A stretch of 64,000 nucleotides of DNA from Macrostomum lignano (Eukaryota): positions 1 to 64,000 of the forward strand of contig NIVC01002216.1 of NCBI GenBank assembly GCA_002269645.1, written 5' to 3'. Position 1 is the stretch's first letter. Each line of letters starts with the position of its first letter. Positions 10,070 to 20,514 of this stretch are shown here, piece after piece. The notes below the pieces were generated by a model, which had not been told where the DNA came from, searched no databases, and worked only from the letters and a program-made list of their open reading frames with translations. Made by a program: the position numbers and the translations under genes.

Positions 10070-20514
<10,445 letters not shown>

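What the first reader, a model, noticed from the sequence alone, without database searches (positions are those of the whole stretch)
13159..13173. ClC channel without the gating glutamate: GKEGP is replaced by GMLGP
Seen: codons GGG ATG CTG GGC CCC in the context [20 protein letters not shown] at the start of helix F. Known: G(K/R)EGP carries the external gating glutamate (E148 in ClC-ec1), which forms the fast gate and couples protons. Neutralising it gives constitutively open channels with little voltage or pH gating. The familiar natural exception is vertebrate ClC-K (GKVGP). Here both the Lys and the Glu are lost (multi-base codon changes, not a single miscall). The proton-glutamate position is also hydrophobic (FSIEL, channel-type). 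The chloride-binding residues are intact: Ser in GSGIP, Phe in GVFMP and Tyr in FYD. Inference: an invertebrate ClC that independently became a gate-less leak channel, convergent with ClC-K, possibly for freshwater/brackish osmoregulation or epithelial transport. The strongest candidate for new biology in this window.
Basis: partly seen in the sequence, partly recalled or inferred. Interest (0 to 1): 0.82.

Follow-up and report, generated by a model that had tools for sequence, protein, structure and literature searches.

The report
Flatworm chloride channel gene lacking gating glutamate
A very diverged chloride-channel (ClC) gene of the flatworm Macrostomum lignano really has leucine where almost all ClC proteins have their gating glutamate. 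The copy in this window has no exon for one membrane helix, so I cannot say whether it makes a working ungated channel.

Summary
Bases 13159-13173 read GGG ATG CTG GGC CCC. In alignments with human ClC-1 and ClC-2, GMLGP lies exactly on GKEGP, so Leu replaces the gating Glu and Met replaces the Lys.

The exon belongs to a multi-exon ClC gene of the ClC-1/2/K channel branch, on the + strand from about 11288 to 20514, in Macrostomum lignano. All splice sites are GT..AG and the reading frame is kept throughout. The gene retains 51 of 61 family-invariant residues. It falls outside the vertebrate ClC-K clade, so the loss of the glutamate was independent.

- The gene as assembled has no exon for transmembrane helix K. 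Exon 5 joins exon 6 in frame across an intron made of two tandem-repeat arrays, and nothing like helix K occurs anywhere in the 64 kb. The CBS tail is also not recognisable. This copy cannot form a canonical ClC fold unless the assembly dropped an exon.
- ClCs without the gating glutamate are not confined to ClC-K. Plant CLC-G and many red-algal ClCs (GRLGP, GKLGP) also lack it.

I could reach no transcript or second assembly. I rate it a new variant of a known kind, of moderate interest, with function unproven.

The parts
11288..11419 (+). Probable first coding exon (ATG at 11288; a second in-frame ATG at 11375). It encodes the cytoplasmic N-terminus ...[15 protein letters not shown] and has a phase-1 donor T|GTAAAT.
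   Evidence: Sequence. BLASTP to the N-terminus of the closest homologue (L001 gene 2) runs through the exon 0/1 junction with E = 3e-9.
12248..12370 (+). Exon 1, helix B ([30 protein letters not shown]).
   Evidence: GT..AG sites with the frame kept; alignment.
12466..12621 (+). Exon 2, helix C. It ends ...CSPIAA-G, with the Gly codon split by the intron.
   Evidence: The intron that follows holds a 15-mer tandem array at 12640-12967.
13031..13236 (+). Exon 3, helices D, E and the start of F. It carries GSGIPE (the central serine) and GMLGP.
13159..13173 (+). The finding itself: GGG ATG CTG GGC CCC = G-M-L-G-P. Leu is at the gating-glutamate position and Met at the Lys/Arg position.
   Evidence: The same DNA is present in the independent model P0127.
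13532..13736 (+). Exon 4, helices G, H and I: [28 protein letters not shown]...YWRGFY. Leu sits at the proton-glutamate position.
14283..14511 (+). Exon 5, the I-J loop and helix J ([24 protein letters not shown]). It ends ...[13 protein letters not shown] with donor GA|GTGAGT.
14512..15891 (+). Intron 5, where an exon for helix K would be expected. It consists almost wholly of two abutting tandem arrays: a 23-mer at 14572-15079 and a 17-mer at 15079-15729. No open frame here resembles helix K.
   Evidence: A six-frame hmmsearch of the whole window with a helix K/L profile gave a best E of 1.1.
15892..16243 (+). Exon 6: a remnant of the helix L region ([11 protein letters not shown]), then helices M, N (PTGVFMP), O, P and the start of Q.
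   Evidence: The 3' junction is confirmed by M. lignano models P0282 and P0283.
16597..16718 (+). Exon 7: helix Q and the start of helix R, with the central tyrosine (LPFYD) and IKRLPH.
   Evidence: Both junctions are confirmed by P0282 and P0283.
17200..17377 (+). Exon 8: the first half of CBS1 ([39 protein letters not shown]...). Its 3' end is uncertain.
   Evidence: The phmmer alignment to ClC-1 extends to here. P0009, P0282 and P0283 contain it. Pfam does not call a CBS domain.
18217..20514 (+). Tentative 3' exons: 18217-18277, 18525-18572, and 20217 or 20242 to 20514 with stop TGA at 20512-20514. At least one open GT..AG path exists. By eye the last exon looks CBS2-like, but this has no statistical support.
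   Evidence: Pieces occur in the chimeric M. lignano model P0009. There is no BLASTP, Pfam or profile support.

Best explanation
This is a real but highly diverged paralogue of the plasma-membrane ClC-1/2-type chloride-channel branch in Macrostomum lignano. Its helix-F motif truly reads GMLGP.

Inferred: the Glu-to-Leu and Lys-to-Met replacements arose independently of vertebrate ClC-K, while the gene was still under purifying selection. An intact protein of this lineage would therefore have no carboxylate to swing into the external and central chloride sites. It should behave as a proton-uncoupled anion pore with little or no glutamate-based fast gating, as ClC-K and Glu-neutralised ClC-0/1/2 mutants do.

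Shown: the copy in this window, as assembled, has no coding sequence for transmembrane helix K and no recognisable complete CBS pair. As written it cannot build the canonical 18-helix ClC fold. It is most likely a recently disabled copy of that gene. Less likely, it is a locus from which the assembly lost a small exon.
For: - The motif and its alignment are confirmed.
- Pfam Voltage_CLC matches at 2.9e-54. The best solved-structure relatives are ClC-2 and ClC-1 at about 1e-47, against ClC-K at 1e-38.
- The gene model is coherent. There is a start codon, nine firmly placed exons (0-8) and at least one open path through tentative 3' exons. All splice sites are GT..AG and there is no frameshift or stop. 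Two junctions are confirmed by UniProt M. lignano models.
- 51 of 61 residues invariant in 13 ClC-1/2/K-type proteins are retained, within the 80-100% range of bona fide members. Overall identity is only 32-39%. This argues for long evolution under constraint.
- In the NJ tree the ClC-K clade has 100% support and is sister to vertebrate ClC-1/2, with the flatworm sequence outside it.
- Helix K is missing. The alignment shows the gap. 54 polar residues lie between helices J and M. Intron 5 is filled by two tandem arrays. No K-like frame occurs in the window. The closest homologues do have helix K.
- The effect of removing the gating glutamate is established knowledge (PMC4188032).
Against: - I could reach no RNA evidence and no second clean assembly. 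I therefore cannot separate 'defective copy' from 'assembly dropped an exon', nor show that any copy is expressed.
- The exon 5/6 junction stays in frame, so a deliberately K-less product is not formally excluded.
- The long branch could partly reflect relaxed constraint.
- M. lignano protein models (P0009, P0127, P0282, P0283) suggest several partial or duplicated copies, so gene decay in this family is plausible.
- Leu is bulkier than the Val of ClC-K and could partly occlude the external site rather than leave the pore open.
Confidence: 0.5

Rival explanations
1. One reading: this locus encodes an expressed, functional, constitutively open ClC channel convergent with ClC-K. The absent helix-K exon would then be an assembly loss, or a K-less protein would still work.
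For: The exons are open, the splice sites are canonical, and the pore-lining residues and 84% of invariant residues are kept. The exon 5/6 junction is in frame. The tandem-repeat introns are the kind of place where assemblies go wrong.
Against: No helix K occurs anywhere in 64 kb. Without it the chain has no hydrophobic segment to cross the membrane between helix J and the extracellular L-M loop (topology from established ClC structures). The CBS domains are not recognisable. No transcript was found, and the protein databases hold only partial or frameshifted models.
Confidence: 0.22
2. It is an old pseudogene, and GMLGP is just neutral decay of GKEGP.
For: Helix K is missing and the C-terminal domain is degenerate. 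The branch is very long. The species appears to hold multiple fragmentary copies.
Against: There is no stop or frameshift in about 1.6 kb of coding sequence spread over nine or more exons, and every splice site is intact. Invariant-site retention is 84% despite only about 35% overall identity. The GSGIP, GxFxP and central Tyr motifs are intact. An old pseudogene would not look like this.
Confidence: 0.2
3. The motif is a sequencing or assembly error and the real gene reads GKEGP.
For: None found.
Against: At least three base changes would be needed. A UniProt model from a different, indel-rich assembly carries the identical GGGATGCTGGGCCCC string.
Confidence: 0.02
4. It is a true orthologue of vertebrate ClC-K, meaning a glutamate-less channel was ancestral in bilaterians.
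For: The top hits in the big protein database were all vertebrate ClC-K at about 32% identity. It shares APISGVLFS and AAAFSGA with ClC-K.
Against: ClC-2 and ClC-1 score better than ClC-K against solved structures. In the NJ tree ClC-K (100%) groups with vertebrate ClC-1/2 and the flatworm sequence lies outside. AAAFSGA is also shared with the unidentified L001 homologues, which keep the Glu. The residue is Leu, not Val.
Confidence: 0.03

Closest known systems
Vertebrate ClC-Ka/Kb (CLCNKA/B), the kidney and inner-ear chloride channels
   Same: It is in the same ClC-1/2/K channel branch. The gating glutamate is replaced by an aliphatic residue. A hydrophobic residue sits at the proton-glutamate position. 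It shares the APISGVLFS and AAAFSGA strings (PMC4188032).
   Different: The residue is Leu, not Val. The preceding Lys, kept in ClC-K (GKVGP), is also lost (Met). It is not in the ClC-K clade. Identity is about 33%. Helix K is absent. Whether it depends on barttin cannot be known.
ClC-2 and ClC-1 (vertebrates), the ClC-2-like channels of nematodes and insects, and the two tandem ClC genes on contig L001 (organism not identified)
   Same: These are the closest relatives by sequence: ClC-2 at 8e-48, and P0121 / L001 gene 2 at 48% identity over exons 3-4. They share the FAVxNYWRGF, GxFMP, xYD and KxLPY motifs.
   Different: All of them keep G(K/R)EGP and have helix K. The window protein is on a much longer branch: 33-39% identity, against 50-63% among the others.
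Red-algal and other protist ClCs with GRLGP, GKLGP or GMLGP (Pyropia, Hildenbrandia, Rhodosorus, Amoebophrya; uncharacterised)
   Same: Leu is at the gating-glutamate position, and one of them (P0166) has the identical GMLGP.
   Different: They form a different subfamily, with GATxGAPIGGTLLxxELMSTYYYIHWLP in place of FAVxNYWRGF. Identity is 24-25% and they branch elsewhere in the tree. The resemblance is convergent.
Plant CLC-G subfamily
   Same: It is a natural CLC in which the gating glutamate is substituted, and it has been suggested to act as a channel (PMC7733266).
   Different: It belongs to the plant intracellular transporter-type clade, and I made no sequence comparison here.
Engineered gating-glutamate mutants (ClC-0 E166A, ClC-1 E232Q, ClC-2 E217 mutants, ec1 E148A/Q)
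   Same: They have the same chemical consequence. With no carboxylate gate, the mutants lose fast gating or H+ coupling (PMC4188032).
   Different: They are laboratory mutants of otherwise intact proteins, and a Leu substitution was not among those I could document.

Membership tests
CLC superfamily (Pfam Voltage_CLC PF00654) | Significant match to the family profile | tested here: met
   E = 2.9e-54, 185 bits against a cut-off of 24.8. 56 solved CLC structures were hit.
CLC superfamily | Selectivity-filter motifs GSGIPE (helix D), GxFxP (helix N) and the central Tyr (helix R) | tested here: met
   GSGIPEL, GVFMP and PFYD align with the family motifs.
CLC superfamily | G(K/R)EGP with the gating glutamate at the start of helix F | tested here: not met
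   It reads GMLGP, so both Lys and Glu are replaced. This is the finding itself. ClC-K, plant CLC-G and red-algal ClCs are accepted members that also fail this feature.
CLC superfamily | Complete inverted-repeat membrane domain (helices B-I and J-Q, plus R) | tested here: not met
   Helix K has no coding sequence in the window. All other helices are present.
Eukaryotic CLC | Two C-terminal CBS domains | tested here: inconclusive
   The first half of CBS1 aligns with ClC-1. Pfam CBS, BLASTP and a ClC C-terminal profile find nothing further. The 3' exons are tentative.
Channel-type CLC branch (ClC-0/1/2/K) | Closest similarity to ClC-1/2/K rather than to the ClC-3-7 exchangers | tested here: met
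   ClC-2 and ClC-1 score 1e-47 and ClC-K 1e-38, against ClC-3 at 3e-32, ClC-6 at 1e-28 and ClC-7 at 2e-27. The NJ tree places it with this group, though with weak support of 23-64%.
Channel-type CLC branch | Non-titratable residue at the 'proton glutamate' position | tested here: met
   FSIEL, against FSIEV in ClC-1/2/K. That channels carry Val at this position is established knowledge.
ClC-K | Membership of the vertebrate ClC-K clade | tested here: not met
   The ClC-K clade has 100% bootstrap support and excludes the flatworm sequence.
ClC-K | GKVGP (Val at the gate position, Lys retained) | tested here: not met
   GMLGP, against GKVGP in ClC-K hits such as P0059 and P0002.
ClC-K | Requires the barttin beta-subunit, with a constitutively open protopore | not testable with these tools
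   This needs co-expression and electrophysiology.
Expressed functional gene | Spliced transcripts and a signature of purifying selection between orthologues | not testable with these tools
   No M. lignano transcript or genome record was reachable. Only indirect evidence is available: intact frames and 84% invariant-site retention.

The most novel reading that the evidence does not exclude
Macrostomum lignano expresses an intact ClC-2-type channel that has lost both the gating glutamate and its neighbouring lysine (GMLGP), and the missing helix-K exon is an assembly loss or is present in a sister copy. That would be an independent, barttin-free, invertebrate counterpart of ClC-K: a constitutively open epithelial chloride conductance that arose by convergence. 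A still more radical reading is that a ClC lacking helix K folds and conducts. My evidence does not strictly exclude this, but I put it at about 3%.
Probability: 0.25. Interest if true: 0.6.

Novelty: new variant of a known kind. Interest (0 to 1): 0.38.

Why it matters
The gating glutamate is the single residue that makes ClC channels gate and ClC exchangers couple protons. Natural proteins that lack it show what else can gate a ClC pore, which is still an open question for ClC-K.

A second, independent loss inside the animal channel branch would be a useful comparison for ClC-K, for three reasons:
- The residue is Leu instead of Val.
- The vestibule Lys is also gone.
- There is no known barttin partner.

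It could also point to a constitutive chloride conductance in flatworm epithelia or protonephridia.

The survey shows too that Glu-less ClCs with Leu are common in red algae, which seems not to have been discussed. Against this, the window copy is structurally incomplete, so the biological weight of the finding depends on transcript data that I could not reach.

Tried and rejected
I used exon 3 alone instead.
- I looked for an independent assembly or transcript of the locus through exact-protein look-ups of P0283 and three window ORFs. None is on record.
- I looked for the missing helix as a small exon in all frames of intron 5, and anywhere in the window with a helix K/L profile. Nothing was found.
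- I first labelled the missing helix 'J'. I corrected this to K from the known extracellular I-J loop and the glycosylated L-M loop of ClC-K and ClC-1.
- I looked for an alternative, mutually exclusive helix-F exon with GKEGP. There is none.
- I tried to confirm the CBS domains by Pfam, BLASTP and a ClC C-terminal profile. All were negative. A CBS2-like string at 21933-22037 had E = 10, which I treat as noise.
- I considered ClC-K orthology because the first database search returned only ClC-K. I rejected it from the solved-structure scores and the tree. The ClC-K-only list is probably an effect of the word prefilter.
- I considered membership of the red-algal GxLGP group. I rejected it on the other motifs and the tree.
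- Literature searches combining gating glutamate and ClC-K with 'invertebrate' or with valine and phylogeny, or combining gating glutamate and CLC with 'flatworm', found nothing relevant. A 2012 M. lignano ion-channel survey lists only CLCN3/4/7-type ClC homologues.

Full report
**1. The observation**

Bases 13159-13173 on the + strand read GGG ATG CTG GGC CCC. The frame translates to ...[35 protein letters not shown].... phmmer against all solved structures aligns this stretch residue for residue with 'GSGMPLGKEGPFVHI' of human ClC-2 and 'GSGIPVGKEGPFVHI' of ClC-1. A MAFFT alignment with ClC-1, ClC-2, six ClC-K proteins and the homologues on contig L001 gives the same columns. Leu therefore sits at the gating-glutamate position and Met at the preceding Lys/Arg position.

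- Ser in GSGIP.
- Leu in FSIEL, at the position where channel-type ClCs have Val.
- Phe in GVFMP.
- Tyr in PFYD.

There are no N bases in the window and no second helix-F exon. A UniProt Macrostomum lignano model (A0A1I8F5Q8 = P0127) reads the same DNA in shifted frames (...[32 protein letters not shown]...). It differs from the window only by single-base insertions, so it comes from another, indel-rich assembly and carries the identical GGGATGCTGGGCCCC string.

**2. Organism and gene**

Several UniProt M. lignano models match window exons almost exactly (P0009, P0127, P0282 = A0A1I8I3X9, P0283 = A0A1I8IAU5). The window is therefore M. lignano, a free-living flatworm.

I rebuilt the gene on the + strand:
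- Exon 0, 11288-11419, with the ATG.
- Exon 1, 12248-12370.
- Exon 2, 12466-12621.
- Exon 3, 13031-13236, carrying GSGIP and GMLGP.
- Exon 4, 13532-13736.
- Exon 5, 14283-14511.
- Exon 6, 15892-16243.
- Exon 7, 16597-16718.
- Exon 8, 17200-17377.
- Tentative 3' exons up to a stop at 20512-20514.

All junctions are GT..AG and keep the frame. The exon 6/7 and 7/8 junctions are the same as in P0282 and P0283. The exon 0/1 junction is spanned by a BLASTP alignment to the N-terminus of the closest homologue (E = 3e-9). Every intron carries a long tandem-repeat array.

**3. Family placement**

Pfam calls Voltage_CLC at 2.9e-54. Against solved structures the scores are ClC-2 and ClC-1 at about 1e-47, CmCLC at 3e-42, ClC-K at 1e-38, ClC-3 at 3e-32, ClC-6 at 1e-28, ClC-7 at 2e-27 and E. 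coli ClC-ec1 at 1e-13. The protein belongs to the plasma-membrane channel branch.

The closest protein found is P0121, at 48% identity over exons 3-4. It is one of two tandem ClC-2-like genes on a Logan contig (L001, SRR16327234; organism not identified). Both of those genes keep G(K/R)EGP.

**4. What is wrong with this copy**

In the alignment the window protein has nothing opposite the hydrophobic segment 'RFLYPAIVSLLVSTVSFPLATG' of L001 gene 1. The same segment is 'KPLYSALAALVLASITYPPG' in ClC-K and 'VWPCFISLVVSSISFPLGIG' in L001 gene 2. This segment is helix K. I assign that name from established ClC topology, in which the extracellular Ca-binding I-J loop of ClC-K and the glycosylated L-M loop of ClC-1 fix the numbering.

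Exon 5 ends ...[13 protein letters not shown], and exon 6 begins [12 protein letters not shown], which aligns with the helix L region. The two join in frame. That leaves 54 polar residues (mean hydropathy -0.89) between helix J and helix M, where the homologue has 90 residues including a transmembrane helix.

Intron 5 (14512-15891) consists of two different tandem arrays that abut directly at 15079. No frame in it encodes anything like helix K. A helix K/L profile finds nothing in any frame of the 64 kb, with a best E of 1.1.

In the ClC fold, helix K carries the chain from the cytoplasmic J-K linker back to the outside. Without it the second half of the protein cannot keep its orientation. 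This is an inference from known structures.

The cytoplasmic tail is also doubtful. The first half of CBS1 aligns with ClC-1. Beyond that, Pfam, BLASTP and a ClC C-terminal profile recognise no CBS domain. The chimeric model P0009 contains about 160 residues between exons 8 and 9 that are absent from the window.

**5. Evidence that it is not simply an old pseudogene**

- About 1.6 kb of coding sequence over nine or more exons has no stop or frameshift, and all splice sites are intact.
- Overall identity to any relative is only 32-39%.
- Even so, 51 of 61 positions that are invariant in 13 ClC-1/2/K-type proteins are retained (84%). Leave-one-out values for the real members are 80-100%.
- The pore-lining motifs are intact.

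This pattern fits a long history under purifying selection. The loss of helix K would then be either recent or an artefact. By the same argument, the three or more base changes that made GMLGP were probably fixed in a working gene. This last step is inference, not proof.

**6. Independence from ClC-K, and how unusual the change is**

A bootstrapped neighbour-joining tree on 420 columns recovers ClC-K at 100% support and places it with vertebrate ClC-1/2 at 64%. The flatworm sequence lies outside on a long branch. This is a rough method, but it gives no sign of ClC-K orthology.

The first database search listed almost only ClC-K. That is probably an effect of its word prefilter, since ClC-2 scores higher.

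A full-library search with exon 3 found 359 proteins at E of 0.001 or better. Of the 149 new top proteins that were listed and retrieved, about 20 have no Glu in the motif: GRLGP 5, GKLGP 4, GMLGP 1, GKVGP 2, GRVGP 2, GVQGP 2, and one each of GSQGP, GEQGP, GVMGP and GKKGP. That list is biased towards Leu, because the query itself has Leu.

The Leu forms that carry names are from red algae (Pyropia vietnamensis, Hildenbrandia rubra, Rhodosorus marinus) and from Amoebophrya; the GVMGP form is from Pyropia yezoensis. They belong to a different subfamily.

The plant CLC-G subfamily is also reported to lack the gating glutamate (PMC7733266).

The named animal sequences in my sample (Loa loa, Zophobas morio) and both L001 genes (organism not identified) keep the Glu. 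Literature searches found no description of a Glu-less invertebrate ClC. Within the animal channel branch this would be the second known loss, but across all life it is not exceptional.

**7. Likely mechanism**

It is established that the gating glutamate forms the protopore gate of ClC-0/1/2 and the proton shuttle of the exchangers. Neutralising it opens the fast gate or uncouples H+. ClC-K has Val there, with a very high open probability (PMC4188032).

An intact protein with Leu at this site and Leu at the proton-glutamate site should therefore be an uncoupled anion pore without glutamate-based gating. The extra loss of the vestibule Lys would remove a positive charge near the outer mouth, and Leu is bulkier than Val, so conductance could be lower than in ClC-K. 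Both points are inference.

For the copy in this window, the absence of helix K makes a functional product unlikely unless the assembly is incomplete.

**8. Limits**

- The spliced protein could not be submitted to the full-library search, and I did not attempt structure prediction because that tool has the same input restriction.
- No M. lignano transcript or second clean assembly was reachable.
- The 3' end of the gene model is tentative.

**9. Verdict**

The codons and their meaning are confirmed. The independent, convergent loss of the gating glutamate in a flatworm ClC-1/2-type gene is supported. The claim of a working gate-less leak channel is not established, and for this copy it is contradicted by the missing helix. 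I rate it a new variant of a known kind, of moderate interest. It can be resolved cheaply by mapping existing RNA-seq reads and by PCR across intron 5.

Noticed in passing
window 12640-12967, 13750-14281, 14572-15729, 16273-16508, 16737-17177, 17401-18163, 18857-20181: Nearly every intron of the ClC gene is filled by its own long tandem-repeat array, with units of 4 to 23 bases, 85-98% matches and up to 133 copies. Intron 5 holds two different arrays that abut at 15079. Many of the arrays give long spurious ORFs on both strands.
   Followed up: partly
window 22393-23442 (+): An intronless 349-aa ORF of the actin family (Pfam Actin, E = 1.7e-86). It lacks about the first 44 profile positions and is clearly diverged from conventional actin. 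It could be an actin-like or actin-related gene or a retrocopy, and it lies 1.9 kb downstream of the ClC stop.
   Followed up: partly
window about 33000-58300 (+), e.g. 34708-37203 and 56003-58306: A large multi-exon cadherin or FAT-like gene (Pfam Cadherin at 2e-31 and 3e-41, and Cadherin_FAT4_N at 4e-10). It has GC-rich exons (up to 67% GC at 56-58 kb) separated by long microsatellite and minisatellite arrays.
   Followed up: partly
proteins P0009, P0127, P0282, P0283 (UniProt M. lignano models): The public M. lignano protein models for this gene are fragmentary, frameshifted or chimeric. P0009 strings together exons 8-10 of one copy and exons 7 to last of another, and it is named a methyltransferase. 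They suggest at least two near-identical copies or partial tandem duplicates of the gene in the species, and about 160 residues that are absent from the window.
   Followed up: partly
proteins P0156, P0172, P0189, P0228, P0240, P0264, P0166, P0187: There is a coherent group of long ClC proteins with Leu in place of the gating glutamate (GRLGP, GKLGP, GMLGP). The named members are from red algae (Pyropia, Hildenbrandia, Rhodosorus), and a fragment from Amoebophrya has the same motif. I found no discussion of this group in the papers searched.
   Followed up: partly
L001 1315-4180 and 4872-8185 (Logan contig SRR16327234_2242): Two tandem, intron-poor ClC-2-like genes from an unidentified organism. 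The second is the closest relative of the window gene and keeps GREGP and helix K. I did not identify the organism.
   Followed up: no
window 21933-22037 (+): A short open frame (IQVQPRQFLYQAYSLKEKVGVVFNTVNKFG) resembles the CBS2 core of ClC channels, but only at E = 10. It is probably chance, though it lies between the presumed ClC stop and the actin-like gene.
   Followed up: no
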